Shown here piece by piece: positions 2,262-64,000 of a stretch of DNA of 64,000 nucleotides (the first letter of the stretch is position 1; every line of letters starts with the position of its first letter). The translations under genes were made by a program, and so were the position numbers. The notes under the pieces are model-generated. The model was not told the DNA's origin. It saw nothing but the letters and a program-made list of their open reading frames with translations, and searched no databases. Origin of the DNA: Zygnema circumcarinatum SAG 698-1b (lineage: Eukaryota > Plantae > Zygnematophyceae); NCBI GenBank assembly GCA_037447605.1, contig CM074817.1, positions 124,001 to 188,000 on the forward strand, in the 5' to 3' direction.

Positions 2262-2389
2262 TGCCTGCTTAAGCAATAGCAGCATTGTGAGGATTGGTTT
2301 GGATTGATTGAAGGAGCTATGGTGTGTCAGAAATGGGGAATTTTTAAAAATGAAAAGAAATATTTCACAGAAAGAGAGATGAAGGAGCC

Positions 2390-7700: not shown

Positions 7701-8604
7701 CCTCCCCTTCCCCCTCTCCCTCGCCCTCCCCCTCCTCGCTGCTACCATCCTTCGCGCCTACCGTCCCATCCCCCAACCCCATCAATGCCCCCGCTCTCTC
7801 CCTCTCTCCCTCCCTCTCACTTTCCGCCAGCTTGTTCAGCCCTCTCATTCCTCTCCCATGCGTCGTATCCTCTACCACCGGCTGCGCCGCCTTCCTGAGT
7901 GGTGCCTTTGCCGTCAACTCCTGTGCCCTTACCACTTCCTTAGAGCCACAACGCAACCATTTCGGAACTTCCTCGTGGTTTTCGAGCAGCTCGGGCCACT
8001 CCTCCTGCGCATCCATGGCTTCAAAGAGATCTAATTCCTCATCCGTGCGGGCAATCAACCGGTTTACTTCCTGCAAAAATGAAGAATTTAACAAATCAGT
8101 AACAATACAAAGCACGAAAAATCATGTATCTGAAACCTAAAAGGAAAAATAACGGGGTAGTTTACCTGCATGCTTGGTACTGAATGTACACTCTGTTGAT
8201 ATCTTTCTTCATCATGAAGGAGAGCTTCTAAAGTCATTCTTCGCTCTTCCTGTGTCGTCCTTTGGTCAAACCTCCCAGCATTGATGACTTCATCCGCCAT
8301 ATCAATCTTATGCTGCTGAATGTTATTCCGTACCAAAGTCTCAATAGAACCCATATAAGGGTCTCTCACTTCCATATCTTCCTCCCCCTCTTCAGGAAGC
8401 CCACCGCTCCCAGACCCACCCCTCTTCTTCTCCTCTCTCCCACTCTTAGTTTTGCTGCCTCTCTCCCCCCTTACCTTCTCCCCCTTCGCCTTCTCCTCTC
8501 GTTTGAGTTCCCGCTCCCGTCGCTCCCTCTCCCGTCTCTCCCTCCGTCGGTCCTCCTTCTTGAAAAACGGAGTAGTCTCTACCACAGCCTCCAAGTAAAT
8601 CACT
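4747..8604 (-). CDS. BRM: BRAHMA SWI2/SNF2 chromatin-remodelling ATPase, 3' portion. Exons 8604-8166, 8070-6130, 6004-5756, 5583-4747; 5' end lost at the gap 8605-8614.
   Basis: VIYLEAVV...YMGSIETLVRNNIQQHKIDMADEVINAGRFDQRTTQEERRMTLEALLHDEERYQ...|EVNRLIARTDEELDLFEAMD...VPKWLR (post-HELICc/SnAC region) and a plant-BRM-type degenerate bromodomain (LEHGDYGGVVEFAEDVHILL...AFPDTDF) match my recollection of Arabidopsis BRM. GT-AG junctions are in frame. Confidence 0.93.
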
Positions 8605-45051: not shown

Positions 45052-48000
45052 ATGGCGATGGGAGGACGCGGGGGGACTGCGGGGAGGACGCTGGTTCGTC
45101 TTCTCACAGCAGTAGTGCAAATTGCCGCCTTTTGCAACAGCTCGGTGAGAGCGCAGAGTCTGTACGACTCGTCGTGGCTGAACGCAACGGCGACTTGGCA
45201 CGCCGTCGGGGACGGGGACGGCGACAGTGAGTTTAAGATTAGGACCATGAGGAATCGATAAGTTTATACTATAGCACGTATTGGTGGATGCGAAATTCAT
45301 GATTTTATTGTTCTTCTTCATGTAAACAGGTCATGTTCGAAGGTCTTTTCGTGATCAAGATCACCACTGAGTTACTGACTGACCAAGGTGTGGGTCGCAG
45401 GCGGTGCATGCGGATATGCTGCGACGGCGTTCGGAAAAATGGCAACAGCAGTGAGCGGCGGATTTTACCAAAAAGGAATGAGCTGCGGCGCATGCTATCA
45501 GGTGAGAGACAATGGCACGGGACTGTCTCCCTCTTTCTCTCTCACTACCCTATCCCCCCTCACATTTAGCTCTCTACCTCGTCCCCCCTCCCGCCCCACC
45601 AAGTCTCTCTCGCTCTATCTCGAGTGTTAACCTCCTCCCACATCTTCCGATGATTCAGGTTATATGCATGAGCAATACTCTATGCTCGCAACAGCCCATC
45701 GTCGTCACAGTCAGCGACGTCTGCGGCGGCTGCGGCAATGGGAACTTTCACTTCGGCATGACCCGCGAAGCCTTTGGAGCCATGGCGGTTGTCGGACAAG
45801 AGAATGTCATTACGAATGTGGGCTACATGAGCCGCGTGATGTACAAAAGGTCAGCTCAAAGGTTCAAATTATGAATGAATACGGTCAACGGAACAACCTC
45901 AGTTTGTAGGTTTGGAAGCAACTAAGCTGCAGAATGCCGAGCTTGGAGGTATTATTGATTTTCTCAGTTACTTTCCGACATGGGACCGAAGTGACAAATC
46001 CTATTCATTGCGGGATGATGCCCAGAGTGCCCTGCAACTACAAAAAGAAGGTGTCCTTCACTGTCAACGAAGGGAGCTCGGTGTGGCGGGTTCAACTTCG
46101 ACTTCGAGACGTAGGCGGACCCGGAACAGTGACGGATGTTTTGATCAAACCGGTGAGAGGGCATGAATGAAGCTATGAAATATATCACTCTGAGCGCCTA
46201 CCTATCCGGCAAGCACACCTTCATCCCTTCGACATTTTCCAAAATTCTTTCTTCTCTCTGTCATTGCAGAATAACTCCAACATTTTTCTTCCGATGAAGC
46301 ACGCTGACGGTGCGAACTTCTACATCCAGTCCCACGGAGAAAGATTTGATGGCCCCTACATAATCCAGCTTCGGAATAACATCACAGGTGAGTGGAAGAA
46401 GGAGCTTAGCAATGCGAGAGAACGGAGGTGGGAGAAGAAGCTCATGGAACAAATATCCGTTGCCGATAAAATCCTCTTTGAAATCGTAGAACTGCTTACA
46501 GTAAATTCAAATCCCTTCACTAAACAAAGTCAAAGCAGAGAAGTACTGTAGACCAATGCTTGCCACGATAGCAGCTGCTATGTATTCGTCATTGATTTTT
46601 TTTTTTTCTTAACTTTTTTTTTCCTTGCAGGTCAATCTTTGATATGTCCGAAATCCATCCCAGGCCCTTCTGAGCAGGGCCCCGCATTCGATTGCGGAGC
46701 ACAATTCCCTATTTCTGCCTTACCACCTTCACCGCTTCGCCGATCCCCTCCTCCCCCGCCGCCGCCTCCCCCCCCTGCCCCCCCCCCGCCCAGACTTCCT
46801 CCTTCTCCTCCACCGTCGCCACGTGTCAACGGTCCCCCGCTATACGGGAGAGTGTGGTACAACGCGACCACCACGTGGTATCCCGGCGTGCCGCCTCAGG
46901 GCAATCCTGATGGTAAGATATCGCCAACGCATTTCTCTCCCTCCTCTCTCCCTCCCTCACCCCCTCTCTCGCGTTCCTCCACTCCCTCTGACACGTGGCA
47001 CCTCCTAGTTCAGGTGGAAACTGCGGGTACCTTGCGCTGAACAGCACGGCGTACGGGAGAATGGCGGCCGCTGGCAGCCAGGCGCTCTTCATGAAGGGAG
47101 CTGGCTGCGGGACGTGCTATCAGGTGCGGCCACGTGGCATGAATCCCTGGCTCGCTTTGCACGGCCATGCAACATGGACCCCTGAGGCCGCACAGCCGGT
47201 TCTAATGGCTGCTGCTATCGGCCCCTCGTGGCTGCAGATCAAGTGCACGAGCAACCCTGCATGCAGCTCGAAGCCGATCACTGTCACGATCACGGATGTG
47301 TGTCCGAGCAACGAAAAGGCGAGCCCCAACTGGTGCGGCGACGGGAAGGTTCACTTCGACCTCACAAGGGAGGCGTTTTCCGCCATGGCTATCCCCTCGG
47401 CAATGGCCAGTTTCCCGGGTAAAGGCTACATGAGCGGCGTACTTTACCGAAGGTGAATTTCTCCCTCTTTTTTGGACAAGCAAACTTGTCAAGGACAGTC
47501 ACGAACACCTCTTTTCTTTCCCACTTTTTCTATCGTTCCCTCACCCTCCCTCCCTCTCCTCCGTGCAGGGTACCATGTGTGTATCAAAAACCCATTTCCT
47601 TCGCCTTCTGGAATGGAAGCTCCGTCTGGTGGCTCAATATCATCCTGCGCGATGTGGGTGGTCCCGGAAACATGACAGACGTCTACATTCGTCCGGTAAA
47701 TCCTTGCCCTTACGAACTTTTAGGGGAAAAAATTCGAAAGAGATTTGGTTGGCAAAAACGTTGGTTGGTGCTAGTGACTAAAAGATCCTTGTTGCTCGTT
47801 TGGGTTTTGGCGCAGTCAAATTATAACAGCTTCCTTCGGATGAATTTCAAATGGGGAGCGGGCTACGACGTGCAGTCGACGGGAACGCCGTTTAATCCTC
47901 CATACGAAATGAAGCTGGTCAACAACGTGACAAGTGAGGCAGCTAGTTTGTTAACAGTTGATAAGAGTGTCCCTTATGACATACTGATCATCCCTCGCAG

Positions 48001-48267
48001 CCGCCGTTTGCTTCTCAATCACTGGAATCGCTATGCGGCTTCTGCGCCGCTTCTCTTGATTGGTGAGACTGCAAATGTCTGCAGAAGATAGGACTGACAT
48101 TTCCCAAATCCTTTCTGAATGGTTTTGCAGGGGAATCTGTGACCTGTCCGAATCTGATCAATGGCCCATACCCTTACCGCACACCCTTCAGCTGCGGAGC
48201 TCAATGGCCCACGCGAGGCAGCCGCGCTTCTCCTCCTCCTCCTCCGCAATCAAGGCGGGCAGCTTAA
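45052..48267 (+). CDS. Tandem two-module expansin-like protein (566 aa) with a Pro-rich linker. Exons 45052-45226, 45401-45501, 45659-45849, 46026-46152, 46270-46387, 46631-46912, 47014-47123, 47238-47452, 47569-47695, 47816-47933, 48131-48267.
   Basis: All introns are GT-AG; exon total is 1701 nt, open to TAA at 48265-48267. N-terminal hydrophobic segment; two GxCGY...CGxCYQ...VPC...DVGGPG sets; exon 6 reads through SPPPPPPPPPPAPPPP into the second ATTTWYPG. Confidence 0.88.
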
Positions 48268-48349
48268 GGCGCTGGATATGGGGAATCGCTTGCCACGAGT
48301 TCTGCAACAATTAGGAAATTGCCCTTCGCCATCTTCTATNNNNNNNNNN

Positions 48350-49544
48350 GGCAGCCAGGCGCTCTTCATGAAGGGAGCTGGCTGCGGGACGTGCTATCAG
48401 GTGCGGCCACGTGGCATGAATCCCTGGCTCGCTTTGCACGGCCATGCAACATGGACCCCTGAGGCCGCACAGCCGGTTCTAATGGCTGCTGCTATCGGCC
48501 CCTCGTGGCTGCAGATCAAGTGCACGAGCAACCCTGCATGCAGCTCGAAGCCGATCACTGTCACGATCACGGATGTGTGTCCGAGCAACGAAAAGGCGAG
48601 CCCCAACTGGTGCGGCGACGGGAAGGTTCACTTCGACCTCACAAGGGAGGCGTTTTCCGCCATGGCTATCCCCTCGGCAATGGCCAGTTTCCCGGGTAAA
48701 GGCTACATGAGCGGCGTACTTTACCGAAGGTGAATTTCTCCCTCTTTTTTGGACAAGCAAACTTGTCAAGGACAGTCACGAACACCTCTTTTCTTTCCCA
48801 CTTTTTCTATCGTTCCCTCACCCTCCCTCCCTCTCCTCCGTGCAGGGTACCATGTGTGTATCAAAAACCCATTTCCTTCGCCTTCTGGAATGGAAGCTCC
48901 GTCTGGTGGCTCAATATCATCCTGCGCGATGTGGGTGGTCCCGGAAACATGACAGACGTCTACATTCGTCCGGTAAATCCTTGCCCTTACGAACTTTTAG
49001 GGGAAAAAATTCGAAAGAGATTTGGTTGGGAAAAATGTTGGTTGGTGCTTATGACTAAAAGATCCTTGTTGCTCGTTTGGGTTTTGGCGCAGTCAAATTA
49101 TAACAGCTTCCTTCGGATGAATTTCAAATGGGGAGCGGGCTACGACGTGCAGTCCACGGGAACGCCGTTTAATCCTCCATACGAAATGAAGCTGGTCAAC
49201 AACGTGACAAGTGAGGCAGCTAGTTTGTTAACAGTTGATAAGAGAGTCCCTTGTGACATACTGATCATCCCTCGCAGCCGCCGTTTGCTTCTCAATCACT
49301 GGAATCGTCATGCAGCTTCTGCGCCGCTGCTCTTGATTGGTGAGACTGCAAATGTCTGCAGAAGATAGGACTGACATTTCCCAAATCCTTTCTGAATGGT
49401 TTTGCAGGGGAATCTGTGACCTGTCCGAATCTGATCAATGGCCCATACCCGTACCGGACACCCTTCAGCTGCGGAGCTCAATGGCCCACGCGAAGCAGCC
49501 GCGCTTCTCCTCCTCCTCCTCCGCAATCAAGGCGGGCAGCTTAA
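48350..49544 (+). CDS. Second, 5'-truncated copy of the double-expansin gene (module 2 exons, offset 1277 from the first copy)
   Basis: Near-identical to 47073-48267 immediately after the gap 48340-48349; differences are substitutions, mostly intronic or synonymous. Confidence 0.8.
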
Positions 49545-51176
49545 GGCGCTGGATATTTGGAATTGCTTGCCACTAGTTCTGCAACAGTTAGGAAATTGCC
49601 CTTCGCCATCGTCTATGGAATATGATGTCCAAATATTTTCAGCGATTCGACGAGACACGTCGAAGTTGAAGTAGGCGTGAGGGGCTTGAAGGGCTCGCTA
49701 GGTGCATGTTGTGTGCACCTCAAAGCTGTGCTTTAGAGCTACTTTTCCTTTTTAATCAGACTGTATTTGAACGCTTGCGGACATCGTACAATAGTTTCGC
49801 CCTTTACTCCTAGGAGCGTTTTAATCCGGCAATATTAGAAATAGTATTGTTTAGAGTTAGGCTTCGCACACACGAGAAATAGATCTCCCTCATGGTGACG
49901 GAAGGTCTGCCAACACGGTCAGCTTCGGCATATGACAGATTAATTACAAATGTAGGTTTTTGAAAAGGTCCTTTTGGTTTTTTGTACAGTCATTGCCCTT
50001 GTGAGAAAAGACAAGAGATTCCGAAACAATTCCATGTTTTCAACTAGTTTACATTTTGGCTGGCTTGGCTTAAAGGGTGCACGCAGTTTTGCATGTCTTG
50101 TTTTGATCATCTATTGAAGACTCCACGTCGCTTCGTCCTAAAATTACAACAGCAGAGATACTTGTTTTTTTTTTTTTTGTTTTGGTTGGAATGTCCCTCC
50201 GCGGTTTACACCCCTTCAGTTTGCAAATGGCACTGTACCCTTAGCTCAACAGCACCGCGCAATTCAGCGCCAGTCGAAAGCGAGTCCCTTCGAGACGAAA
50301 AAGGAAACTGAGAAAAGCATATTAGGAAAATGCATATTGACCGACCATGCCTGGGTTTAATTATTTTAAATTTTGTGTACCTGTTCATTCCGAAATTTTG
50401 CCTTTAGTTGTGCGGTCAGCCCTGGCTTGGCGGCTTTGGAACAGCTTTTCACGGCGAAGCCTTTGACGATGAGTTATCAACTTTGTTGGAGAACGTTGGC
50501 AATCACAAGGCGCAGGAAAGACTATAGCGGAAGCAAAGCTAATACGTGTAGACTTTATTATGCAGAGCCCGTCAGACGTGAGTACCGCGGTAAAGTCTTC
50601 ACCGGTGAATTACTAATTGTTCTATCACGTCTTGTCACTATTGAAAAAGACGGAGTGGACATTGTACGATCAAAGTGAGGACAGAGAGAGTTGACACAAA
50701 AAGACAGATGTGTGATTAACGTGGTACAGTGTACAATGTCCTAATCTGTTTTATATACATTGCGGCTAGAGCTACGCGACAAAAGAACGTGGAACTAGCC
50801 TGAGCAAAGGGCGGCCGGGTGTGAAGCACAGAGCCGCAAAGGTACAACTAAACTAACAAAAAAAGTACAAGCTAAAGGTACAGCCAGGTGTAAGTACACG
50901 TTGCTAGGAAAACGACAAAAGAGTACGAGAAAACTGAGAATGTCGGATTCTCAACACTCCCTCTCATTCGAAAGTGTGGAGTCCAGGAGCCGATGGTCAA
51001 AGCTGGCCGATGTGCGCCTTGGTAAGAAAATCACCTACGTTCGCTACCGGGTAGGACGTTAGGAGGAAGGTAAGGGTGTCGTCTTCGATCTTGTCCCTAG
51101 TGAAGTGGAACTGAATGTCGATGTTTTTGGTACGTTGATGGTGCACGGGGTTTTGCATGAGGGCAAGGGCACCTTG

Positions 51177-51620
51177 TGTAGCGAAACGCTATACATGGGT
51201 TGTATGGCCGAGTACTTACATCCGCGGTTGCCTTCTAATGGTAAAGCACTTAGGTGAATACCGGGAGGTCCTGAGTTCAAACCCTGCTGCAGGCAGGTTC
51301 GTTACATTGGTATCAGAGCCTAAGGACTGGTATTTGCAATCCACCCTAAAAACACCGTGATCTCTGAGCATGGTACGGTTGGCCAGAGGGTCTGAATCGT
51401 ATATTTGTGCATATGTTGAAGGAGCTTGAACGCTGCTCGTGAAAAACCTTGACTGCGCTCGAGGACGAGCCCGGTTTAGGTGGGGAGGAATGTAGCGAAA
51501 CGCTATACATGGGTTGTATGGCCGAGTACTTACATCCGCGCTTGCCTTTTAATGGTAAAGCACTTAGGTGAATACCGGGAGGTCCTGAGTTCGAACCCTG
51601 CTGCAGGCAGGTTCGTTACA
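51177..51620 (+). mobile_element. TRIM (444 bp) with 130-bp LTRs (51177-51306, 51491-51620) that contain a tRNA-like module; inserted in the RNase H of D
   Basis: Perfect TSD CCTTG; TG...CA ends; PBS TGGTATCAGAGC at 51308-51319; PPT AGGTGGGGAGGAA; the LTRs differ at 3 positions; no ORF. Confidence 0.95.
51540..51608 (+). other. tRNA-like sequence within the TRIM 3' LTR (equivalent at 51226-51294 in the 5' LTR)
   Basis: GCTTGC/GCAGGC acceptor-like pairing, D-loop-like TAATGGTAAAGC, and AGGTCCTGAGTTCGAACCC with a B box (GTTCRANNC). The cloverleaf is imperfect, so this is not a functional tRNA. Confidence 0.75.
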
Positions 51621-54600
51621 CCTTGAGAGTCCGTGAAGACGGTGGTAGCGTGAGGGGGGGGAAAAGTGAGGTTGGAGAGGAGGGATCGGAGCCAAACAAC
51701 CTCTTTGGCAGCAGTGGAGGCGGCCATATACTCTGCTTCAGTGGAGGATGTGGCCACCGTAGGCTGCTTCCGAGAGGACCATGAGATAAGGCCACTGCCC
51801 AAAGAAAAACACGAGCCAGTAACCGAACGCCTTGTGTCGGGGTCACTGCCCCAGTCAGAGTCACAAAAGCCAACAAGGGTGGGGGAGCCAGAGGAGAAGG
51901 TAAGGCTCAGGGCCTTGGTGCCCTGAAGGTAACAAAGGACACGCTTGGCAGCGCTGAAGTGAGCAGGGGAGGGGCGGTGAAGGTATTGGCTGAGCTGCCG
52001 GACGGCGGCAGCTAGGTCGGGCCGAGTACACATCATTGCATACATAAGGGATCCCACGATGGATCGGTAAGTGGCATGCTCCGTGGGGTCGGGGGAGCCA
52101 ACCACAAGGGAGGTAAGGTGAATGTGGGCGTCCAGGGGGGTGGAGATGGGGTTGCAAGCGGCCATCCCAAATCGGTCAAGGAGATTGGAAACATATTTTT
52201 CCTGACTGAGGTGAAGGGTCCGAGCAGCCCGATCTCGAATGACGTGAATCCCGAGACACCATTGCAGTTCGCCGAGGTCGGTCATGTCAAAGTGGCTGCG
52301 AAGGAGCTGTTTGACAGCCGAAATGGGGGGAAGGGAGGGACCACAGATGATTAGGTCATCAACGTAAACCGCAAGGATAGTGAGGGTCTGACCGTGGCCA
52401 CGAAGATAGATGCTGAAATCGGCTTCGATGCGAGTGAAGCCGCTTGNNNNNNNNNNGTGACATACCCGTCGGGTTGGCGCATAAAAATCGTTTCTTGAAG
52501 GTCCCCGTAGAGGAATGCGGTTTTGACGTCCATCTGGTGAATTTCCCAATCGTGGGTGGCGGAGAGAGCAAGGAGGACGCGAATGGAGGTGAATTTGGCC
52601 ACCGGGGCATAAGTTTCGGTGAAGTCGATGCCTTCAAGCTGAGAGAACCCCTTGGCTACAAAACGGGCTTTATAGCGGTCAACCGAGCCGTCGGATTTTT
52701 GTTTGTTGCTGAATACCCATTTGGAGCCGATGGCGCGACGACCGGGTGGGAGGGGGACAAGGTCCCACGTGTTGTTTTTCTGAAGGGAGAGGAATTCAGC
52801 ATCAGCGGCAGCTTTCCAGAGGGCGGCGTCAGGGGTGCGAAGGGCGGCAGCAAAAGTAGGCGGGGCAGATGAGGAGGCGACGAAGGCCATGGCGGAGGAA
52901 AGGAGGGCATGGGCGGCAGTGTCGATAATTTTCCACGTGGGTCGTCGATCGCGAGTGCCATGGCGGGGGGCAGGGCCGGGGGGAACCGGAAGGGAGAGGG
53001 CCGGAGGGCGGGGTGGCGGGGAGGCCGCGACCGGTGGAAAGGGGAGGGGAAGTCGGGGAGGCGGGAGAGAGTGCTGAGGGGGAGGAGGGGGCTGGGCCGC
53101 AGTGCAGGGGAGGGTTCCGCGCCCGGCCTCGGTGACAACTGAACTCCCTCTGACAGAAGAGGGAGGGTCGAGAGAGAGATGAGGGGAGGGAGGGGGGAGC
53201 GGGAGGGGGGTTGAATGGAGGGACGTGAAGTACCCAAAGAGAGGGAAAGGGAGCGGCGATGAGGGCGGGGAGAATAGGAATGTCGGTGGCCAATGGGGGA
53301 GCGGCTGCGGGGGGGGGAGGTGAATGATATCCAACGGTCACATAGGTGGGGGAATCGTACGGCGCAAGATTGGGATTCGGCGGGGAGGAAGTCGGCGGGT
53401 GTACGGACGTGGTCGCTGGCAAATGAAGCTGCGCGACGAGCCATGGATGTCGACGTCGCGCAAAACACAGCTCAAACTCATCGCACAGACACCAGACTCG
53501 ATCAGCCCTACAACGTGAGCGCGTGTCCCACAGGAGAGTGCCGCGTGGCCTCGCGTCCCCATTGGCACGGCTGGACGGGGTTTTTGTGCCAGGCCTGGCA
53601 CCAGAGCTGCGGAGGTGGGAAAGCAAAGGTGCCGTCCCTCCCAGGCCTCGTAGGGATTGTTGTGAGGAAGGGCAGAGGTGGGAGAAAGGTTCCGAAGGTA
53701 AGTGGCCGTGGAGATGGCTTCCGCCCAGAAGGCCATAGGGAGGTCGGCAAAATGAAGCATAGAGCGAGCCATGTCAAGAATGGTGCGGTTAAAGCGCTCG
53801 GCGACTCCATTTTGCTGGGGGGTGTAGGGAGCGGTAGTCTGATGGGTGATGCCGTGAAGGCGAAGGTATTTGGAGAAGGCGGTGGACATAAACTCGCCGC
53901 CGTTGTCAGTGCGGAGGGTCTTGATGCGGCGACCGAGAAGGGTCTCTGCACGGGCTTTGAACTCTTGGAAGCGGGAGAAAACGTCAGACTTGTGAGCGAT
54001 GGGAAAAACATGGGAAAAATGAGTCGCTTGGTCAATGAAAGTGACAAAGTATGATGCGCCGCCGAGGCTAACATCGCGCATAGGGCCACAGACATCAGAA
54101 TGAATGAGTGCCAGAGGCTCAGAGACAAGGGTGGAGCTTGAGGGAAAAGGCAATCTGGTCATTTTTCCTTGAATACAGCCGGAACAAAAAGCTAACTTCT
54201 CGGTAGAGAAGGAGTCTAAGCCTAACACTAAGCCCTGGCCGAGAGTTCTGAGGCTGCTTTCAGCAAGGTGGCCAAAACGGAGATGCCACCGAGCAAAGGT
54301 AAGGGGGGGGTCAGTGGTGTGAGCATGGGCGTGCCCAAGGGAGGCTGCAAAAGAGGTAAGGGAAAATAAGCGGCCGGTTTTGCGGCCGTGCCCAACTACA
54401 GCTTCTGGGGTGAAGAAAGAAACCCCGTCTGGCCTAAAAAGAGTTGAAATGCCTAAAATCAGGATGGAGGCTACTGAAAACAGATTCTTCGCTAGTCCAT
54501 CCACCAGGTAGACGTCATCGATGATGAAGCGCTGGCCGTCAATTAGAGTGGAAACCTGGCCGACATGCGTGGAGCGAAGGAGCGGTTATCCTGCAAATGG

Positions 54601-56365
54601 TCATGGGAGAGGAGAGAGCCAGAGAACCAGCCACGACGAAAGGTTAGATGAGATGGGAGGCACCCAGTCAACAAGCTGAAGTTGAGGGAGAGAAGGGTCA
54701 TACCTAAAAGGGTCCGCGGCCACAAAGGCGTGACTGAACTTGGAGCACCGTAGACGACACCCCGTGGGGTGGAGGTGGGCCGGGGGGGAAGCCGGGGTGA
54801 GCGAGGGTGTACGGCGGGGCGGTGGCCCGCGGAAACCAAGGGAGCGAGGACGTGAGGGAGAGGGGCCACGCAAGCTGTACGACAGGTTCAGCGGGGCTCG
54901 GGTCGAGGGGGCCAATCGGAGGCGCCGCGACACCGCTGCGCCAGCTGGGTCAGGCACGACGGCGCTGGAGCCGGCGTGCCTCCTTTTTGGCCAGAGCGGC
55001 AGTTGTCCTTTCACGTGAGTCTGTTCCCTCGCAATATTGACAAAAAAAGCGCCGATGTACTTGGACGCAGGTCATATCCAAGAGCGCGGACGTGTGGGAG
55101 GGACCTGGAGGTGGAACCCCTCCTCCTCGCCAAAAGAGGGTCGGCGAGACCAGCGACGGTTAGTGAGATCGAGGCAGCATCAATGGACGAGATGAAGGAC
55201 CGGAAAGAGTCGGGCAGCCCGCCTAAAAGATTACAGATGATCTCATCATCATGAACTACGCAATCAATGCTGCGAAGCCGTCTAGCAAAGGATTTGACGC
55301 GGTCAGTATATGTCAGCATGGTTTCAGAGGATTCCTTTACGCAGTTAGTGAAGGCACGCCGCAAACGGAGTTTGTGAGACCACTTCCGAGGTTCGTACGC
55401 ATTGGTCAGAAGAGTCCAAGCGTCGTGGGAGCTGGTGGCGTCACGGACGTGTCCGATGAGACTGCGCTGAATGCCGAGTGTGATGCGGAGAAACGCCTTC
55501 TTGTCGCGTTTTGTCCAATCGGCGATCTCCTTCGCGCGTGCAGCCAAGGCGGCCGCGTCGGCGGTGGAGGGAAGTGGCAAAGGACAGGTCTCTAGACCAG
55601 TAACGACAGACCACAGATTCTCTTCCTAAAAAAGCAGCTGGCACTGAAACTTCCAGTCGTGCCAGTTTGTCCCATCAAATTTTTCAAGCGCATTTGAGGC
55701 ATGAGTGGNNNNNNNNNNACAAAAAGACAGATGTGTGATTAACGTGGTAAAGTGTACAATGTCCTAATCTGTTTTATATACATTGCGGCTAGAGCTACGT
55801 GACAAAAGAGCGTGGAACTAGCCTGAGCAAGGGCGGCCGGGTGTGAAGCACAAAGCCGCAAAGGTACAACTAAACTAACAGAAAAAGTACAAGCTAAAGG
55901 TACAGCCAGGTGTAAGTACACGGGGCTAGGAAAACGACAAAAGAGAACGACAAAACTGAGAATGTCGGATTCTCAACAGTCACGACTGACTGCTCATTCC
56001 CAAAGGCACTGATAAGGGATCCAAGAATCATCACGGGCAATGCAGCGCAGTCCACGGTGGAGTGCCGGCGGCCCGTTGCAGGCGCATGCACGCGAGGCAG
56101 CAGGTGTACGGCCAGATTCGAGGCGCACTCACGCGCACTTAGGGACGATTCAAGGATCCCAATCCGCCCAGGAATCAACGACCGTAATGCCCAATCGAAT
56201 GGGCAACAAACTCAGCAAGAAATAGGGGGAGTCAGACCTTGACCATCGCCAAATCAATTTCGCCAGCCCGTCGGGCCAATTCTGCTTTGTACGGCAGGCC
56301 TTTTTCGCCAAAAGTGGACGTGCGACAGACTCGGGCGTCACGAATTCAAGAAAGCAATTATTTTA

Positions 56366-56529
56366 GGGTAGTGATATTTCCACCCCTTTTTTGGATCCAA
56401 ACACCCCTTCCCGGCCGGGCAGATTTCAAAAAGGATTAAAAACGTAAAATGCCTTTTTCACACCTTTTTGGAATCGATACCACCCTCCATCGGCAGATTT
56501 TATTTCTGCGAAACAAGGAAAATGATAAC
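56366..56529. mobile_element. Left TIR of a second member of the 43602-44540 foldback family (cut by a gap)
   Basis: GGGTAGTGATATTTCCACCCC...GGAAAATGATAAC is colinear with 43602-43768. Confidence 0.85.
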
Positions 56530-56539
56530 NNNNNNNNNN

Positions 56540-57297
56540 ATGAAACACAGGGTTCTCCATGAGGGCTATAGATGACTGGTTGTCCGTAAAAAGAGTCAAT
56601 GGTGTTTGTGGTTGCTTACATTCATCAAAGAAATGTTGGAACCACATCCCCTCCTTCGCTGCGTGGCACGCTCCCATGTACTCTCCTTCGGTGCTCGACA
56701 GCGCCACCGAATCTTGTAACTTCGAGCTCCATGAGATCGCGCCTCCTCCGTTCAAGAACACAAATCCTGACGTCGATCGTGACGTGTTCACGTCACCTCC
56801 CCAATCTGAGTCGGTGTATCCGATCACTCTAGTCGGCCCCCTCTCAAACCTGAGGCCGTAATCCAAGGTCCCTTTCACGAATCTGAAGATCCGCTTCACG
56901 GCCTCCCAATGTTCAGGACCGGGATTCTCCATGAACCGACTTGCTGAGCTCACGGCTTTTGCCAAGTCAGGACGAGTACCTATCATCAGATACATTAAAC
57001 TCCCGATTGCCGATCTGTACGGAACTCCGTACATTCTCTGTACCTTCGCATCTGTCGCAGGACCACCCTCCGACAACGTGTTCGATCTCCATCGGATCTT
57101 GAGAGGACGGCATTTTCCCACATTTTGAGCTGCAAGGACATCTGTGGAATTTCTTTGACAAGTAAACAAGCGCCGTCCTGCCCTCTTCAACTGCATTCCT
57201 AGGAGATACTGTGCCTCCCCTAGATCCGACATTTTGAAGTTAGCTTCCAAAAGCTGTTTCAAATCATTGATTCTCTCCAATGAGAGGCTCACCATTA
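56540..57297 (-). mobile_element. Copia (family C-like) RT C-terminus/RNase H fragment, interrupted by G2
   Basis: IMVSLSLERINDLKQLLEANFKMSDLGEAQYLLGMQLKR is nearly the same as element C; YTDSDWGGD...SWSSK...STEGEY. Confidence 0.9.
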
Positions 57298-60200
57298 TGT
57301 AGCGAAACGCTACAGTCACCCCAAGGGGGAAGGGTTACTTAGAGCCCGGCGTGGCTTTATGTTTCCATCCAATGCAGTACCTAACGGTTAGAGCATCGGA
57401 TACCCTATAGGACGACGGAGGTCCTAGGTTCGAACCTTAAGAACTGGTTCACCAGTGGGGCCGCCACATAATCTCTATGGGCCCCACGTCAGCGGCCAAG
57501 GTCCCCTCCTCTCAGCGTAGAGGAGGATCACGGGCTAACGGCACCACGGGACCAATCCGGCTCCCGTGCCATCTGCGGCCCACGCCCGGACCCCTTGCCC
57601 ATCCTCGCCGTCCCTCATGCTGACCTGTCACCGCATGCACGACCAGTTGCCAGTCGGACCCGTGTCGGGCAGGGATCGGGTTGTGAGGGCTGACTCACGT
57701 GGTGGGTGCCGACGGTGTGTGCCGTGGAATGCGGCGAGCACCTCGGGCACGCTGTACACCCTTGACCCATGCAGGTCAGAGAGGGACACGTGGCAGTTTG
57801 CCATTGGACAGCCCGCTTCCAACTCTCTCCAGGCGCTGATGACTCAGTTGGGAAGTGGCAGAGGGTGGCGGGACTGTCGGATCACCACAGACTGGATACG
57901 AGTTGGGTGCCCATCCTGGGGCTGTCCCCACTCCTGAAGGCGCTTCCTCCTCTCTCCCTCAGCTGAACTCTGAGAGGTGTTCCGCCGGATGTAGGGTTAC
58001 ATTTCAGCCGCGACATTTGGATCAGAGCAGGTTTTCGTTTTCTTTTTGGAAGGAACCTGCCGGTCATGGTGACCACTCGGCCGGGTTGGTGGACCCGGGC
58101 CTCGGAGCCACCCTCACTACCCCCGGGACGAGTGCATGCAGCAGCATTCGGGACCCCGCCACCATCCCATGGAGGGGCCCAGTCCCAGCCCACGGATGAC
58201 GACACCACCCAACCGCCTGCCCCTCTCCCGTGCCACCGGAGCGCCGGCTCCGGCAGAACCTCGCCGATTCATGATTCGTGGCCCACATCACGGTGGGCGC
58301 TTCCCTGAAGATGAAGAAGAAGATCGACGACCTGGGAGCGGATGTAAGGCAGCAGCGCGTCGCCACCATGGCCTGTACGAGGCAGGTGGACGACATGGAG
58401 CTCACGGTCCGCCGCTTGGTGGACACGCTCCAAATGGAGTTCCGGGGCCTTGCGGACAGGCTCCGGAGGATCGAAGAAGGTATGCCTCGAACCCCCCCCC
58501 AGGCTGTAGAGACAGTAGATGCGGCGGGTCCTGGGGAAGGGGTTAGGCACACCACCGCGGTAGCATCGTCGCTACCGGCGTCCCAACCGGCTGCCGGAAG
58601 CAGCCGGCAGAGATCTGGACCCCCTGTTGATTCAACGGGGGGGAGTCACCCCCATGGGGGTGGCGAACCACCCAGCAGTGGGGGACCCCCGTCGGGGGCA
58701 GCTGCTGGGGGCGGAGGAGATCCCAGTCCTCGGACTGCTCCCCCGCAACCTACTGAGGATGCCCGACGGAATCGGGCCAAAGTGGCCCCGCTTTCCTTTT
58801 GGGGCGAACATCCTACCACGGACTGCTCGATTGAGCAGTGGTTGGGTCAAACGAAGGGTTACCTTCTGGCGACCAACTGTCCCCCCCTCCAGTGGGTAAG
58901 CTTTGCTTACCCAGCACTCAGAGGAGCCGCATACCGTGTGTATGAGGGCCTCTCTGATGAGATTGGGGACGATTGGGATAAGTTCAGAGATGAACTTATC
59001 AATCACTTTGGGGCCTTGGATCCCGGCTTGGAGGCCCGGGATAAATTTCAGAACATGGTCCAAACCGGCAGTGTCAAGCAGTTCCTGCGAGACTGCGCGA
59101 GCTGTCAAACCTCACTTACAGCCTGTCAGCCCAGTTCCTCTCTCACTTCAGAATGGCTTGAAGCCACCTGAGGAAGCAGTTGAGAGTGAGCTCAGAGACT
59201 CTGAAATGTGGGACCGCCAGCCCAAGCCTGTACTTTGATGAGCCATTCAGTTGGAGATTGCCTGCAGGCGATGCAGGCCCTTCCCGACCCCAGCAGAGGT
59301 CGGGCGACGTGACAGGGTCGTGGAAGGCGGGACCCTCAGCTCCTGCCAAGATGGCAGGAAAGAACAAGCGGAAGCAGCCGGAAGTGGCTGCCCGCCCACC
59401 CACTGCACGGCCGCAGAAGTTGACTCCAGAGGAAATGGAGAAGATGCAGCGGGAAAACAAATGTTTCCGTTGCCGCAAGGAGGGGCATAAGGCCCGAGAT
59501 TGCCCTCTGAACTCCAAGGACAGGAAGGGCAAGGGGCCGGAAAACCCCAACCCACCAGCAGTTTAGGAGTCGCTGCTGGTGGAGTAAGCAGGTTAGGGGA
59601 TGGGAGGACAGTTGCCGTCAATGTTAAGGGACTTTTGTGGCTTAGGTCCACGGACATGCTTAACTTGTTGGGCAGGCCTTTGGGGGTGCACGATCTCGTT
59701 GTGTGTCATGCGCTTCCTGATTCCATGTCCTTTTCCCCTGCCACCCGGCGGTGATCCCTCTAGGTTTGATGATGATCATGTTGTGCCAGCATGTTTCAGC
59801 TCTAAGATGGGATGATGTCTTAGCATGAGATGTGCCATGGATGCCTGTTGCCCTGTGTACTTCCCACACACCAGGGGTGTGCTGGTTTGACTCCTGGCAA
59901 GGTAAATTTTTTGACGCTGACTGCGGTTGGTGAAACAGCTGAGAAAAGGGCACAAGTTAGTGCAAACGATGGAAGGATCCACCAGTTCACTGGTTGGATC
60001 CCCCTACACCTTGGTGTGGAGGACGGCTCGTCCTCAACCCTCGCATATAGTGCGATCTATGTTCCATCTTGCCCATCGTGCCATGACCTTCATCGGGTCG
60101 GCCAATGGCCACCCAGCAGTTCTACTGCTAGATACTGGGGCAGATTCTAACTTTGTTAGTTCTGCGTTCACCCAGAGATTTGGGTTGACCACAGATCCCC

Positions 60201-63200
60201 ATTCAGAAAGTGTTACTTTCGGGGATGGACGCAAGGGCCAGATCTCTGGTAGCGTCACACTCAAGATCAAGCTCCAATCCTACTCCGGGGCAGTGAAGTG
60301 CCTTCTGACACAACTGGCCTCTGGAACGGATGTTATTTTGGGGAGTGCTTGGTTAACCATGGTCAAAGCCCAATTGGACTTTTCCATCCCACACTGTATT
60401 CTGCACAGTGGGGATAGGCGCATCACACTACACCCTGGCAAAACCACATCCACTGCGTTCGCGCAGGTTGCTAGTCCTTATCTCTGCTCGGCTATGCAAT
60501 TGGCCAAGGCAGTTAAAGAGGGTTGCACCCTGTTCATGGTGCATGTCATGGCAGCCACTGAGGATGTTCATGACGAAGATCAGGAATGGCAGATCACATC
60601 TACGGATGTGCTCTCAGTCGTTCCACCCAAAATCCAACCTCTGTTGGATGAGTTCAGGGATGTTTTCCCACTGGCCTTCCAGGAGTTGCCACCATCTAGA
60701 GGAGTGGGCACACAATCCTCTTGAGCCCTGAGCAAAAGCCGCCCGCCGGCGGCCGACCCATCGGTCACGCTGAAGAAACCGAACAGACTGCGAAGCAGCT
60801 GCAACTTCACGTGATAAGGGCGGCACAGAACCCAGCTCAAGCCGCCGGGCTCATCATCTGGTCCGGGCAAAGATGGCCTCGTCGAGGATGTGCATTGATT
60901 ATCGCGCACTCAACAAGATCACTGTAAAGAACCGTTTTGCTTTACCACGTATTGATGATCTGTTGGATCGTCTTCACGGTGCCAAGGTGTTTACATCACT
61001 TGATCTCGCCCAGGGTATCATCAGATCTGCGTCACGGAAGCCGACGTGCTAAAATGCGTTTCGGATGTTGATCGGTCATTTCCAGATAAAGGTACCCCTT
61101 TCTGATTGATGGGCGCTTGGCGCTTTCCAGGCTGCGATGATCAGTGTTCATAAGCATGGATGAGTTTGTTTTGGTTTACCTCGATGATATCCTTGTCTTC
61201 AGTAAGACGGAGGAGTCACATCTTGAACACGTTCGGAAAGTGTTTGAGACCCTGAGGAAACACCAGTTTTATGCCAAGAGGAAGAAGTGTCACTTCATGC
61301 AACGTGAGTTGCTTTATCTTGGGCATATCCTCAATGATCAGGGTCTTCGACCTGATCCTGCCAAAGTTTCCGCGGTAGAAACTTGGGCGCCACCGACTGA
61401 CTTGCATCAGTTGAGGTCTTTCTTGGGATTTGCGAATTATTTTCGTAAGTTCATCCAAGGGTTTAGTAAGTTGGTTACTCCCTTGACTAATTTGACACGT
61501 TCCGGTGTCCCCTTCACATGGACCCCTGAATGCCAGAATGCATTCGAAGGTGTGCGCCATGCACTTGTTATTGACTCATTTTCCGCTCAGTGGACCTGTC
61601 CAAGCTCACTGAAGTGGTCTGATGCTTCGGGCTCCCTCTGGGCCCGCCTTGTTTCAAGGTGGCTGACCTCCGATGGCATAAAGTCGCAAATGAATCTGCT
61701 GAGTTAGCGATCTGGAACGGAGAGGAACTGCTTGGAAGGGGTCCATGCCCTGAGGACATGGCGGTGCTATTTAGAGGGGGCGAAAGCGGTCACGCTGGTC
61801 ACTGACCACCGCCCGCTGACGTTCCTCTCAACCCAACAGACCCTGTCTAGGCGGCAGGCACGCTGGTCTGAGTTCCTCCAAAGGTTTGACTGCCAGTGGG
61901 TCTATCGGCCCGGAAGGCTGAATGTAGCAGACCCACTGAGTAGGCAGCCTCGGCATCTTGCCTGGATGGTGCGCTCGTCGACTCGAGTGTTGGTGGAACG
62001 AGATGACAGAGGTGAGGGGCCGGCCAACCCCGAGTCTCCGTCTCCAGTATGCTTTGTCATAGATCCCTCCACCAGTGACGCAGTCAACCCTCCTGCTCTC
62101 TCTGATCTCAGACAGATGATTCAGGAGGGGTATACTGGTGATCCTTTGTTCCTGGATGGCCAAGGAAATGGCTATAAGAACAAAGTGGTGTCTAAGGACG
62201 GATTCTGGTACCACGGCCAGCAGTTGGTCGTGCCCAAGGCCGGGACTGTACGGCAGCTCATTCTGGGTGAGCTACATGATCCTCCGTACCGAGGTCACAT
62301 GGGAGTTGCCAAGACCCGTGAGGCACTGCTCCGAGAGTTCTGGTGGCCTGGACTCTCGAGGGATGTGAAAGCGTATGTACTCGCTTGTCCAACTTGTCAA
62401 CGAAACAAACCCCGCACTGGCAGGATCCCTGGCCAGCTGCAACCCCTCACACCTCCTTTTCGGAAATGGGACAGTGTGGGTATGGACTTGATCACAGATC
62501 TTCCTGTGACACCTCGGGGGCATGACTCCATCTCGCTTTGCTTTCAGGCCCAAGATGGTGCATCTTTGCATGAACTACTGGAGACCTCTGGTTGATTGCA
62601 TCTACGTCTGCTCACAAGTGACCATATGGTCTTCAGTCAGAAATTGTGTCTGACCGTGATCCACGATTCACCAGCCATTTTTGGACGGAAGTGCTCAAAA
62701 TCGTTGGGACCAAGCAGGCGTTGAGTACAGCTTTCCACCCGCAAACCGATGGCCAGACGGAACGGGTGAACAGGATCCTGGAGGATTACCTCCGGCATTA
62801 TGTGGGACCTACCCCGGATGGGTGGGACGAACTGCTCCCAGTGGCTGAGTATGCCATCAATAATGCTTTCCAGGAGTCCATTGGTACCACCCCTTTCTTC
62901 TTGAACTTTGGCCAGCATCCTCTAAATCCCCTGCAACCAAGGGATCAGCCCCCTGATCGTGGAACATGGGCGTCCACAGACCCCCACCCTCGCAGAGCTG
63001 AGAGGAACCACGGGGCTCAAACTCTCCGCAGTCAGACTTTTGTCCGCTAATGTCTGAGGGCGTGACACACGCAGACCTGCTGAGCCGCCCAGCCGCCACA
63101 AAAGGCCTTACATGCTGCCGACCGGGCTTCACCGTGATCTAACTCACCTTCACAACGAAGGGCGAGGTGTTGCTAAGCACGGCGAACTTGAGACTCAGCT

Positions 63201-64000
63201 TATGGCGGAACACGCAGCCGCGGGCCCGCCGACCTTTCCCGTGTCGCGGAAGCTTAATCAATGATGTCGCTATTGTGTTGATTTACCATCCCCATGAAGG
63301 CGATCCGCCTTCATGTGGGTTTATAAAGGTCTACCGTGAGTTGGCGGGGAGGATCCAACTACCCCCACTGGGGAACCTTGAAGGTGAACTTGGAGTATGG
63401 AAGTTGAAACCATTCAAGCCCACCGGCCTTGTGAGAAAGTGGTCGATCTTCCCGCCAGCGAATACTCTCGTGAAGTGGTTGGGCTATGGGGTTGAGCATA
63501 GCACATGGGAAGCTGAGGGCAACCTGACCAACTGCCAAGAGCTCATCAACTTGTACTGGGAGGCGCGGGCCGCTGGAGAGCGGGCGAGGGCGGCTCGGGG
63601 GGTTCCTGAACCGTCTTCGCGCAACTCGGAAAGGGACTTGACCGGGATTATCGCTGAGCCCTCCCGGTTATCACGTAGAGTTCGACGCGTGCCGTTGAAA
63701 CTACGAGCTGCCTTTACTACCCCACACACGTGAACGAGGACGTTCACATCCTCACAGGGGGGGAGTAATGTAGCGAAACGCTACTGTCACCCCAAGGGGG
63801 AAGGGTTACTTAGAGCTCGGCGTGGCTTTATGTTTCCATCCAATGCTGCACTCCCACCCAAGTAGAGCATCTGGAGCACCCTATGTGATCTACTCTGAGG
63901 TCCTGTGTTCGAACTCCAAGCACTGTTCACCGCTGGGGCCGCTACATAATCTCTTATGGGCCCCACGCCGCACAGGTCCCCTCCTCGCAGAGGAGGATCA
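57298..64000 (+). mobile_element. Ty3/gypsy chromovirus G2: 5' LTR 57298-58015, PBS about 58016-58028, gag 58278-59566, pol (extra domain, PR, RT, RH, IN, chromodomain) about 59545-63570, PPT 63756-63765, 3' LTR from 63769 running off-window
   Basis: Zn knuckle CFRCRKEGHKARDC; LLDTGADSNF; YLDDILVFS; WWPGL..DV; FHPQTDGQTERVNR; chromodomain LVKWLGYGVEHSTWEAEGNL; both LTRs start TGTAGCGAAACGCTAC; PBS TTTGG-ATCAGAGC. Confidence 0.93.
57375..57446 (+). other. tRNA-like A-box/B-box module in the G2 5' LTR (noisier equivalent at about 63845-63925)
   Basis: TACCTAACGGTTAGAGCA (D-arm/A-box-like) followed by GGAGGTCCTAGGTTCGAACC (T-arm/B box); the 3' LTR has GAGGTCCTGTGTTCGAACTC. Confidence 0.72.

What the first reader, a model, noticed from the sequence alone, without database searches (positions are those of the whole stretch)
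57298..57450. Coding chromovirus shares the terminal hairpin and tRNA module of the TRIM: candidate autonomous partner
Seen: both G2 LTRs and both TRIM LTRs start with the same 15 nt, TGTAGCGAAACGCTA. In the G2 5' LTR this is a perfect hairpin (TGTAGCG-AAA-CGCTACA). Both families then carry a D-arm-like segment followed by GAGGTCCT.xGTTCGAAC, and both use the iMet PBS. Inference: a full gag-pol chromovirus with a tRNA-type internal promoter in its LTR, plus a miniature relative that keeps the integrase-recognition end and the Pol III cassette. This would identify the helper and origin of tRNA-LTR TRIMs and raises dual Pol II/Pol III control, or short LTR-derived RNAs, in an autonomous element.
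Basis: partly seen in the sequence, partly recalled or inferred. Interest (0 to 1): 0.86.

Follow-up and report, generated by a model that had tools for sequence, protein, structure and literature searches.

The report
tRNA-like TRIM beside related dead chromovirus
A 444-base miniature retrotransposon whose repeats carry a decayed tRNA-like piece lies 6 kb from a broken gag-pol chromovirus whose repeats have the same ends and one matching 20-base tRNA-like block. This makes that chromovirus family a reasonable but unproven source or helper of the miniature element.

Summary
The observation mostly holds. TGTAGCGAAACGCTA occurs exactly four times in the window, each time as the first 15 nt of an LTR: two in the TRIM and two in G2 (0.05 expected by chance).

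The TRIM (51177-51620) is complete. It has 130-nt LTRs at 97.7% identity, an exact iMet-type PBS, a PPT and a 5-bp TSD (CCTTG). Its LTR holds a decayed tRNA-like segment that matches the published Selaginella 'Helenus' LTR in sequence and spacing. TRIMs of this type are already described (Kojima 2024).

G2 (57298 to beyond 64000) has every chromovirus domain, including the chromodomain, but it is dead. It carries at least 5 frameshifts and at least 3 stops, its LTRs are only about 80% identical, and its PBS is off by two positions.

Beyond the 15-mer, G2 and the TRIM share:
- an 18-20 nt T-arm/B-box-like block
- a 7-nt D-arm-like motif upstream of that block
- the LTR end GTTACA
- a similar PPT

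The stretch between these marks and the internal regions show no similarity above chance. Rfam, default ARAGORN and folding energy see no tRNA in G2.

No other copy could be found in any library, so nothing could be tested at family level. The partner or progenitor reading is plausible. Dual Pol II/Pol III control of G2 is unsupported.

The parts
51172..51176 (.). TRIM target-site duplication, left copy (CCTTG)
   Evidence: Read directly; the same 5 nt follow the 3' LTR.
51177..51306 (+). TRIM 5' LTR (130 nt; starts TGTAGCG, ends GTTACA)
   Evidence: 97.7% identical to 51491-51620; 15-mer at its first base.
51198..51295 (+). Decayed tRNA-like segment in the TRIM 5' LTR; the same segment lies at 51512-51609 in the 3' LTR
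   Evidence: ARAGORN at 90% threshold finds an intron-less 98-nt cloverleaf in both LTRs. 51239-51283 matches the D-arm/T-arm pattern of the published Helenus-1_SMo LTR with 3 mismatches in 31 specified positions at the same spacing. Rfam finds nothing.
51307..51490 (+). TRIM internal region (184 nt, non-coding), with PBS at 51308-51319 and PPT at 51478-51490
   Evidence: The PBS 12-mer is exact. The purine tract abuts the 3' LTR. There is no similarity to the G2 internal region above shuffles.
51491..51620 (+). TRIM 3' LTR
51621..51625 (.). TRIM target-site duplication, right copy (CCTTG)
57298..58014 (+). G2 5' LTR. It ends either at 58001 (GTTACA, as in the TRIM and in a Haematococcus relative) or at 58014 (ACA, one base before the PBS-like site).
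   Evidence: GTTACA occurs only 9 times in 64 kb, and three of those are at these LTR ends.
57298..57314 (+). Terminal hairpin TGTAGCG-AAA-CGCTACA (the finding's start)
57389..57436 (+). tRNA-derived remnant in the G2 5' LTR: TAGAGCA motif followed by the T-arm/B-box-like block at 57417-57436
   Evidence: The block matches the Helenus-1_SMo block with 3 mismatches in 20 (0 expected). No tRNA is called by Rfam or ARAGORN.
58017..58028 (+). G2 PBS-like site (2 mismatches to the iMet-type 12-mer), followed by three T4-5 runs at 58032-58047
58278..59566 (+). G2 gag (capsid-like domain and CCHC zinc knuckle), broken
   Evidence: Pfam PF03732 and PF00098. The two domains lie in different frames.
59921..63733 (+). 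G2 pol (protease, RT, RNase H, integrase zinc finger, chromodomain), broken
   Evidence: Pfam hits. tblastn with six relatives gives at least 4 frame switches and 2-5 in-frame stops. No Pfam hit to the integrase catalytic core was recovered.
63467..63562 (+). Chromodomain at the C-terminal end of pol
   Evidence: PF00385, E = 1.7e-9.
63756..63768 (+). G2 PPT (AGGGGGGGAGTAA)
   Evidence: Matches the TRIM PPT in 11 of 13 positions.
63769..64000 (+). G2 3' LTR, first 232 nt only (cut by the window end); B-box-like block at 63897-63914
50696..55981 (-). Copia element that hosts the TRIM (LTRs 50696-50959 and 55719-55981, 95.8% identical)
56426..57297 (-). Copia RT fragment interrupted by G2
   Evidence: RVT_2 hit; it shares 71-75% DNA identity with other copia copies in the window.

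Best explanation
The 444-bp element is a Helenus-type TRIM: a non-coding miniature LTR retrotransposon whose 130-nt LTR is mostly a decayed tRNA-derived sequence.

G2 is an old, inactivated copy of a chromovirus whose LTR belongs to the same LTR lineage. It has the same first 15 nt, the same last 6 nt, a similar PPT and a shared tRNA-derived T-arm block. Most likely the TRIM LTR arose from a G2-family LTR by deletion, or exchanged sequence with one.

The TRIM would then be copied and inserted in trans by the RT and integrase of that family or a close relative. An iMet tRNA primes at the PBS. The PPT primes the plus strand. The integrase recognises the shared TGTAGCG.../...GTTACA ends and makes a 5-bp duplication.

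Shown: the anatomy and the shared motifs. Inferred: common descent, trans-dependence, and any Pol III transcription. Pol III transcription is plausible for the TRIM by analogy with Cassandra and Helenus. It is doubtful for G2.
For: - The 15-mer occurs only at the four LTR starts.
- The TRIM is complete: LTRs at 97.7%, exact PBS, PPT, TSD CCTTG.
- The T-arm block is shared: the local alignment scores z = 4-7 against shuffles, and the block occurs in the four LTRs only.
- The block and its spacing match the published Helenus-1_SMo LTR.
- Relaxed ARAGORN hits fall in both TRIM LTRs. Shuffled windows give 1.4 such hits per 64 kb, so p is about 0.005 for a region named in advance.
- GTTACA sits at both TRIM LTR ends and 16 nt before the G2 PBS-like site (p about 0.004).
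- TA[AG]AGCA lies upstream of the block in all four LTRs.
- The PPTs agree in 11 of 13 positions and are contiguous with the 15-mer.
- Copia LTRs in the window start TGTT and end AACA. Distant chromovirus relatives start TGTAGCG, TGTAGCA or TGTAAC after a G-rich PPT, and one ends ACGTTACA.
- G2 has gag, protease, RT, RNase H, integrase zinc finger and chromodomain.
Against: - There is only one copy of each family, and no further copy in any searchable collection.
- Similarity is confined to short blocks. The middle of the LTRs and the internal regions are no more alike than shuffles.
- The PPT likeness alone is not significant.
- The spacing from terminus to block differs by 32-41 nt.
- TGTAGCG-type ends are common in this clade and even occur in published fish Helenus LTRs, so part of the match is clade-level.
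- G2 is dead and older than the TRIM insertion (Jukes-Cantor distance 0.225 against 0.023).
- G2's two LTRs disagree most in the supposed tRNA-like stretch (26 of 52 columns identical).
- Rfam finds no tRNA in any of these LTRs. Folding energy is no better than shuffles.
Confidence: 0.55

Rival explanations
1. The two are unrelated beyond clade level. The TRIM is moved by some other chromovirus of the same clade. The shared 15-mer reflects conserved integrase-recognition ends. The T-arm block entered the two LTR lineages independently, through a tRNA-derived SINE insertion or tRNA capture, as proposed for Helenus origins.
For: - Relatives at only about 50% amino-acid identity already share TGTAGC(G) and the G-rich PPT.
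- Fish Helenus LTRs also run TGTAGCG...CGCTACA.
- The middle segments and internal regions are not similar, and the spacing differs.
- The block also resembles that of a Selaginella Helenus, so it could come from a common tRNA or SINE type.
- Kojima argues for repeated SINE insertion into LTRs (PMC10886601).
Against: - The terminus agrees in 15 of 15 nt, against 6-7 nt at clade level.
- The block agrees in 18 of 20 nt, in the same orientation and order relative to the TA[AG]AGCA motif, in both families.
- The LTR 3' end also matches.
- No SINE hallmarks (A-rich tail, flanking direct repeats) are seen around the G2 block.
- No free SINE copy occurs in the window.
Confidence: 0.3
2. The block in the G2 LTR is a working Pol III promoter. 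The autonomous element would then be under dual Pol II/Pol III control or would make short LTR-derived RNAs.
For: - GTTC[GA]AAC is kept in both G2 LTRs although the DNA around it has diverged.
- The 5' LTR has no T4 run, and three T-runs follow the PBS. A Pol III transcript of about 600-700 nt is therefore conceivable.
Against: - No tRNA-like fold or Rfam hit was found.
- Only one of the two G2 LTRs keeps the GGTTC core that Kojima reports as conserved in Helenus.
- A box-A-like TRGCY motif lies about 30 nt from the YGG motif, not next to it.
- The absence of T4 runs from 717 nt is expected by chance about half the time (my estimate from base composition).
- The T-runs would prevent a Pol III genomic RNA.
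- Kojima reasons that partners of such TRIMs must use Pol II.
Confidence: 0.1
3. Chance or assembly artefact.
For: The window is a draft with 12 N-runs and one suspicious tandem duplicate.
Against: - The motif counts lie far above shuffles.
- No N-run lies inside the TRIM or the G2 LTRs.
- The TRIM has a clean TSD.
Confidence: 0.03

Closest known systems
Helenus (TRIMp3), TRIMs with tRNA-derived LTRs; Kojima 2024, PMC10886601. The only plant example is Helenus-1_SMo of Selaginella moellendorffii.
   Same: Short non-coding element with two LTRs of about 120-130 nt made largely of a tRNA-like sequence, an iMet-type PBS, a G-rich PPT and a 5-bp TSD. The D-arm/T-arm motifs and their 14-nt spacing match Helenus-1_SMo. 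As in most Helenus families, the tRNA-like part is not a functional tRNA.
   Different: The LTR ends differ (TGTAGCG...GTTACA against TGTTAG...CCAACA) and the internal region is longer (184 against 85 nt). Here a coding element with the same LTR ends and block lies nearby. For Helenus, no LTR similarity to any autonomous element has been reported, and it was argued to be unlikely.
Cassandra (TRIM with 5S rRNA-derived LTR), as described in PMC10886601 and PMC7215508
   Same: The same concept: a small-RNA-gene-derived Pol III promoter module inside TRIM LTRs, with no known autonomous partner.
   Different: No 5S match here (Rfam). The module is tRNA-derived.
Classical TRIM or LARD paired with an autonomous partner that shares LTR ends
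   Same: Shared LTR termini, PBS type and PPT between a non-coding derivative and a gag-pol element. Sequence similarity in LTRs is the usual sign of such a relation (PMC10886601, discussion).
   Different: The similarity here is limited to short blocks, and the coding copy is decayed.
Chromoviruses (Ty3/gypsy with a C-terminal chromodomain). The nearest named relatives are gene models from Haematococcus lacustris, with other green-algal proteins further off.
   Same: Domain order gag-PR-RT-RH-IN-chromodomain, and a G-rich PPT followed by TGTA. One relative's LTR ends ACGTTACA.
   Different: Best amino-acid identity is only 48-57%. The relatives' LTRs, as far as they could be seen, have no tRNA-like block.
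tRNA-derived SINE heads
   Same: A degenerate tRNA-like sequence that retains B-box-like and partial A-box-like motifs.
   Different: It sits inside LTRs of elements with a PBS and PPT. It has no tail and no TSD of its own. No free copy occurs in the window.

Membership tests
TRIM | Two short direct terminal repeats (about 100-250 nt) starting TG and ending CA | tested here: met
   130-nt LTRs, 97.7% identical, TG...CA.
TRIM | PBS next to the 5' LTR and PPT next to the 3' LTR | tested here: met
   Exact 12-mer at 51308, one base after the LTR. Purine tract at 51478-51490.
TRIM | No coding capacity; total length well under 1.5 kb | tested here: met
   444 bp in total, with a 184-nt internal region.
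TRIM | Target-site duplication | tested here: met
   CCTTG on both sides.
Helenus / TRIMp3 | tRNA-derived sequence in the LTR | tested here: met
   Relaxed ARAGORN cloverleaf in both LTRs. 28 of 31 specified positions match the Helenus-1_SMo D-arm/T-arm pattern at identical spacing, with 0 expected. It is degenerate: no Rfam hit and no excess folding energy.
Helenus / TRIMp3 | Box A (TRGCY, YGG) and box B (GGTTC) motifs as reported by Kojima | tested here: inconclusive
   TGGCC at 51205 and TGG at 51239 are about 30 nt apart. Box B reads AGTTC[AG]AACC, so the first G is lost.
Helenus / TRIMp3 | Transcription by RNA polymerase III | not testable with these tools
   No expression data are available.
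Chromovirus (Ty3/gypsy) | gag, protease, RT, RNase H and integrase in that order | tested here: met
   Pfam hits in that order. tblastn spans about 1000-1130 residues of the relatives. No Pfam hit to the integrase core.
Chromovirus (Ty3/gypsy) | Chromodomain at the integrase C-terminus | tested here: met
   PF00385, E = 1.7e-9, at 63467-63562.
Autonomous (intact) element | Uninterrupted gag and pol reading frames | tested here: not met
   gag has at least 1 frame change. At least 1 stop lies between gag and pol. pol has at least 4 frame switches and 2-5 stops.
Autonomous partner of the TRIM | Shared LTR termini, PBS type and PPT | tested here: met
   15 nt at the 5' end, GTTACA at the 3' end, PPT 11 of 13, and a PBS of the same type with 2 mismatches.
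Autonomous partner of the TRIM | The relation holds across the family, and the two were active at the same time | not testable with these tools
   No further copies were retrievable.
tRNA gene | Cloverleaf recognised by covariance model or tRNA finder | tested here: not met
   Rfam finds none, even at E<=10 on short stretches. Default ARAGORN finds none. That E limit counts all 4227 families, so a weak match to the tRNA model alone could be hidden.
Cassandra | 5S rRNA-derived LTR | tested here: not met
   No 5S hit.

The most novel reading that the evidence does not exclude
The G2 family is a coding chromovirus whose LTR begins with a Helenus-like mini-LTR. In the 3' LTR, the first ~175 nt run from TGTAGCG, through the tRNA-derived block, to CGCTACA, the exact inverse of the start. 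This would be the first LTR-level link between a Pol III-type TRIM (TRIMp3) and an autonomous element. It would show either how such TRIMs are born (by deletion from a long LTR) or that TRIM and helper exchange LTR modules. It would contradict the expectation that such partners share no LTR sequence.
Probability: 0.25. Interest if true: 0.7.

Novelty: new variant of a known kind. Interest (0 to 1): 0.45.

Why it matters
TRIMs with Pol III-type LTRs (Cassandra, Helenus, Ajax) have no identified autonomous partner that shares their LTRs. The one paper that defines Helenus argues that such sharing is unlikely.

A coding element with the same LTR ends and a matching tRNA-derived block would give a concrete candidate family. 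That family could be followed through one genome to learn how these miniature elements arise and whom they depend on.

As it stands, the evidence is one decayed copy and a few short motifs. It is a lead, not a result.

Tried and rejected
- **Rfam.** I searched at gathering and at E<=10, on the whole window, on 13 kb, and on the LTRs alone. There was no tRNA or 5S hit. The mir-58, RsaE and other weak hits are chance.
- **ARAGORN.** The default run found nothing. Relaxed thresholds with introns gave mostly nonsense hits. Only the intron-less TRIM hits were kept, with a shuffle control.
- **RNA folding of the tRNA-like stretches.** They fold no better than shuffles.
- **More copies.** Protein searches with the RNase H-integrase piece found at best 48-57% identity. 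A copia ORF found at best 58%. An exact look-up of a window ORF found no record. The source genome is therefore not in the libraries, and the organism stays unknown.
- **Pattern scans.** The metagenome scan with the 15-mer plus 5 degenerate positions gave 22 hits, none extending beyond about 25 nt. The viral-contig scans gave nothing.
- **LTRs of distant relatives** (L001, L024, L026, L028, L029). They have clade-typical ends, but no tRNA-like block.
- **TRIM internal region against G2 internal region.** No similarity.
- **SINE insertion into the G2 LTR.** I saw no tail or flanking repeats, but decay could hide them.
- I built no consensus of any LTR or gene and no reading through frameshifts.
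Full report
**What is there**

The 15-mer TGTAGCGAAACGCTA occurs exactly four times in the 64-kb window, all on the + strand: 51177, 51491, 57298 and 63769. Shuffles give 0.05 matches with up to two mismatches allowed. Each occurrence is the first base of a long terminal repeat.

**The small element (51177-51620)**

This is a complete terminal-repeat retrotransposon in miniature (TRIM):
- Two 130-nt LTRs, 97.7% identical.
- One spacer base, then the 12-mer TGGTATCAGAGC.
- A 184-nt non-coding internal region.
- A purine tract, AGGTGGGGAGGAA, abutting the 3' LTR.
- The 5-nt duplication CCTTG on both sides.

It sits inside the RT/RNase H region of a minus-strand copia element (50696-55981, LTR pair 95.8% identical). 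The TRIM is therefore younger than that element. That the 12-mer pairs with initiator-methionine tRNA rests on general knowledge of plant LTR elements and was not tested here. In this window the 12-mer occurs exactly five times, four of them directly after a recognisable LTR end, in several element families. It does not discriminate between possible partners.

**The TRIM LTR is tRNA-derived**

- Default ARAGORN and Rfam see nothing.
- At 90% of its threshold, ARAGORN draws an intron-less 98-nt cloverleaf with a long variable arm in both LTRs (51198-51295 and 51512-51609). Shuffled windows give 1.4 such hits per 64 kb. A hit in a region named in advance therefore has a chance of roughly 0.005.
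- The paper that defines 'Helenus' TRIMs gives the LTR of its only plant family, Helenus-1_SMo from Selaginella (PMC10886601). Its 20-nt T-arm block matches both TRIM LTRs with 2-3 mismatches, and the G2 5' LTR with 3 mismatches, with none expected.
- Its D-arm half plus 14 free positions plus the T-arm block matches the TRIM 5' LTR in 28 of 31 specified positions at identical spacing.
- The stems are decayed. The folding energy is no better than shuffles, and the 'anticodon' reads cta or tta.

This fits Kojima's finding that most Helenus LTRs are not functional tRNAs. The TRIM is a new member of a known kind.

**G2 (57298 to beyond 64000)**

G2 has all the parts of a chromovirus, in order:
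- a gag capsid-like domain
- a CCHC zinc knuckle
- an aspartic protease
- RT (N-terminal part weak, C-terminal part clear)
- RNase H
- an integrase zinc finger
- a chromodomain (E = 1.7e-9)

After these come a purine tract, AGGGGGGGAGTAA, and the 3' LTR.

It is not intact:
- gag has at least one frame change.
- At least one stop separates gag from pol.
- Against six related polyproteins, pol shows at least four frame switches and two to five in-frame stops.
- No Pfam hit to the integrase catalytic core was recovered.
- The PBS-like site at 58017 differs from the 12-mer at two positions.
- The LTR pair is about 80% identical over the 242 columns available, a Jukes-Cantor distance of 0.225 against 0.023 for the TRIM.

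This copy long predates the TRIM insertion. Only its family could have served as helper. G2 interrupts another copia RT (56426-57297, minus strand). Its 3' LTR runs off the window, so the LTR end and the TSD cannot be verified.

**What G2 and the TRIM share**

1. The first 15 nt.
2. The PPT (11 of 13 positions), contiguous with the 15-mer. BLAST reports this as a 28-nt match at 93%. The PPT alone is not significant.
3. The block GGAGGTCCTnnGTTCGAACC. It is the only significant local alignment once the 15-mer is removed (z = 4-7, with 0-5 of 1000 shuffles as good). It occurs in the four LTRs only.
4. The 7-mer TA[AG]AGCA, 15-28 nt upstream of that block in all four LTRs (p about 0.002 per family).
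5. GTTACA as the LTR end in the TRIM, and at 57996-58001 in G2, 16 nt before the PBS-like site (p about 0.004). A second candidate end, ACA at 58014, sits one base before the PBS-like site, as in the TRIM.

**What they do not share**

- The 72-nt (TRIM) and 104- or 113-nt (G2) stretches between terminus and block are no more alike than shuffles.
- The sequence after the block is not alike.
- The internal regions are not alike.

The 'shared tRNA module' is therefore two short motifs in the right order, not a continuous homologous segment.

**Are the ends chromovirus-type?**

Yes. The copia LTRs of the window start TGTT and end AACA. The nearest retrievable relatives of G2 have 48-57% amino-acid identity. 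They are metagenome contigs and Haematococcus lacustris gene models. Their LTRs begin TGTAACG, TGTAGCA, TGTAGCG or TGTAAA after a G-rich PPT, and one ends ACGTTACA. This supports a chromovirus as the TRIM's mobiliser.

It also shows that 6-7 nt of the match is clade-level. Published fish Helenus LTRs also run TGTAGCG...CGCTACA. None of the relatives' LTR parts I could see carries the block or a tRNA-like hit. The block is therefore not a trait of the wider clade.

**The hairpin**

The hairpin is real in all four copies, with stems of 7, 6, 5 and 5 bp. One distant relative (L026) also folds its LTR start back on a GCTACA about 20 nt downstream. Two other relatives do not. It overlaps the integrase-recognition end. 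With so few sequences, I cannot separate a structural role from a palindromic recognition site.

**Pol III**

For the TRIM, a Pol III start just upstream of the tRNA-like part would leave a U3 of roughly the shared 15-21 nt. This is inference by analogy with Cassandra and Helenus. The box motifs reported by Kojima are only partly kept: TGGCC and TGG lie about 30 nt apart, and the box B core reads AGTTC.

For G2 the case is weak:
- No tool sees a tRNA.
- Only the 5' LTR keeps GGTTC.
- Three T4-5 runs lie directly after the PBS. By the established rule that Pol III terminates at T-runs, they would end any Pol III transcript there.

Dual control of the genomic RNA is thus unlikely. A transcript of about 600-700 nt that stays within the LTR is conceivable, but nothing supports it.

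**Unexplained**

The G2 LTR pair has diverged very unevenly. Columns 1-78 are 76/78 identical, columns 79-130 are 26/52, and the rest are 88/112 (Fisher p = 7e-11 for the first two blocks). The worst block is the supposed tRNA-like middle. Possible causes are inter-element recombination, local gene conversion or a replaced segment.

The 3' LTR also carries CGCTACA at LTR positions 172-178, the exact inverse of the LTR start. The 5' LTR has CGCCACA at the corresponding place (positions 165-171). The first ~175 nt of the G2 LTR therefore have the layout of a small LTR around the tRNA-like block. I noticed this after the fact, and its chance probability is about 0.01-0.02.

**Limits**

I found no other copy of either family. 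The protein libraries hold nothing closer than 48-58% identity. An exact look-up of a window ORF found no record. The metagenome and viral pattern scans gave only chance-level hits. The organism is unknown. The nearest named chromovirus relatives are green-algal, and the tRNA-like block resembles that of a lycophyte Helenus.

**Verdict**

The TRIM is a new member of the known Helenus/TRIMp3 kind. The link to a chromovirus LTR is a plausible new variant, resting on five short concordant marks in single copies. The stronger claims are not supported: an intact autonomous element, a Pol III cassette in G2, and the origin of tRNA-LTR TRIMs in general.

Once I also pictured the G2 LTR-end/PBS junction without the bases between its two candidate ends.

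Noticed in passing
window 57298-57530 vs 63769-64000: The two G2 LTRs have diverged very unevenly: 76/78 columns identical, then 26/52, then 88/112. The most diverged stretch is the supposed tRNA-like middle. This could reflect inter-element recombination or a replaced segment.
   Followed up: partly
window 63940-63946 (and 57462-57468): CGCTACA, the exact inverse of the LTR start TGTAGCG, lies about 175 nt into the G2 3' LTR. The 5' LTR has CGCCACA at the corresponding place. The first part of the long LTR therefore looks like a small LTR with a terminal inverted repeat.
   Followed up: partly
window 58032-58047: Three T4-5 runs lie directly after the G2 PBS-like site. The 717-nt 5' LTR has none.
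   Followed up: partly
window 57366-57402 and 63837-63876: In both G2 LTRs, a stem formed by CCAUCCAAUGC and GCAUC(U)GGA closes over the most diverged stretch. The stem is kept while the loop has changed.
   Followed up: no
window 51547 vs 51233: One of the three differences between the TRIM LTRs turns TTCT (5' LTR) into TTTT (3' LTR), inside the anticodon-like loop. This is the only T4 run in the TRIM.
   Followed up: no
window 47073-48339 and 48350-49616: Two 1267-nt tandem copies, 98.4% identical, are separated only by a 10-N gap. This may be an assembly duplication.
   Followed up: no
window 8600-42600: A dense nest of copia and gypsy remains, with many 68-93% identical pairs in both orientations. 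Four further exact iMet-type PBS sites lie at 22034, 26354, 26486 and 36718. The window has 12 N-runs.
   Followed up: partly
window 1384-3113 and 7158-7410: Purine/pyrimidine microsatellites (units TGGGAG, CTCTCC, CCTCCT). A 687-aa ORF on the minus strand (6052-8115) has no Pfam hit and is probably a low-complexity read-through.
   Followed up: no
L026:2447-2478: A distant chromovirus relative from a metagenome has an LTR that starts TGTAGCG and folds back on GCTACA about 20 nt downstream. This is a longer version of the terminal hairpin.
   Followed up: partly
L004:219-242: A GC-rich metagenome contig matches the TRIM LTR start in 23 of 24 nt, followed by what looks like bacterial coding sequence. 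I judged this a chance match.
   Followed up: partly
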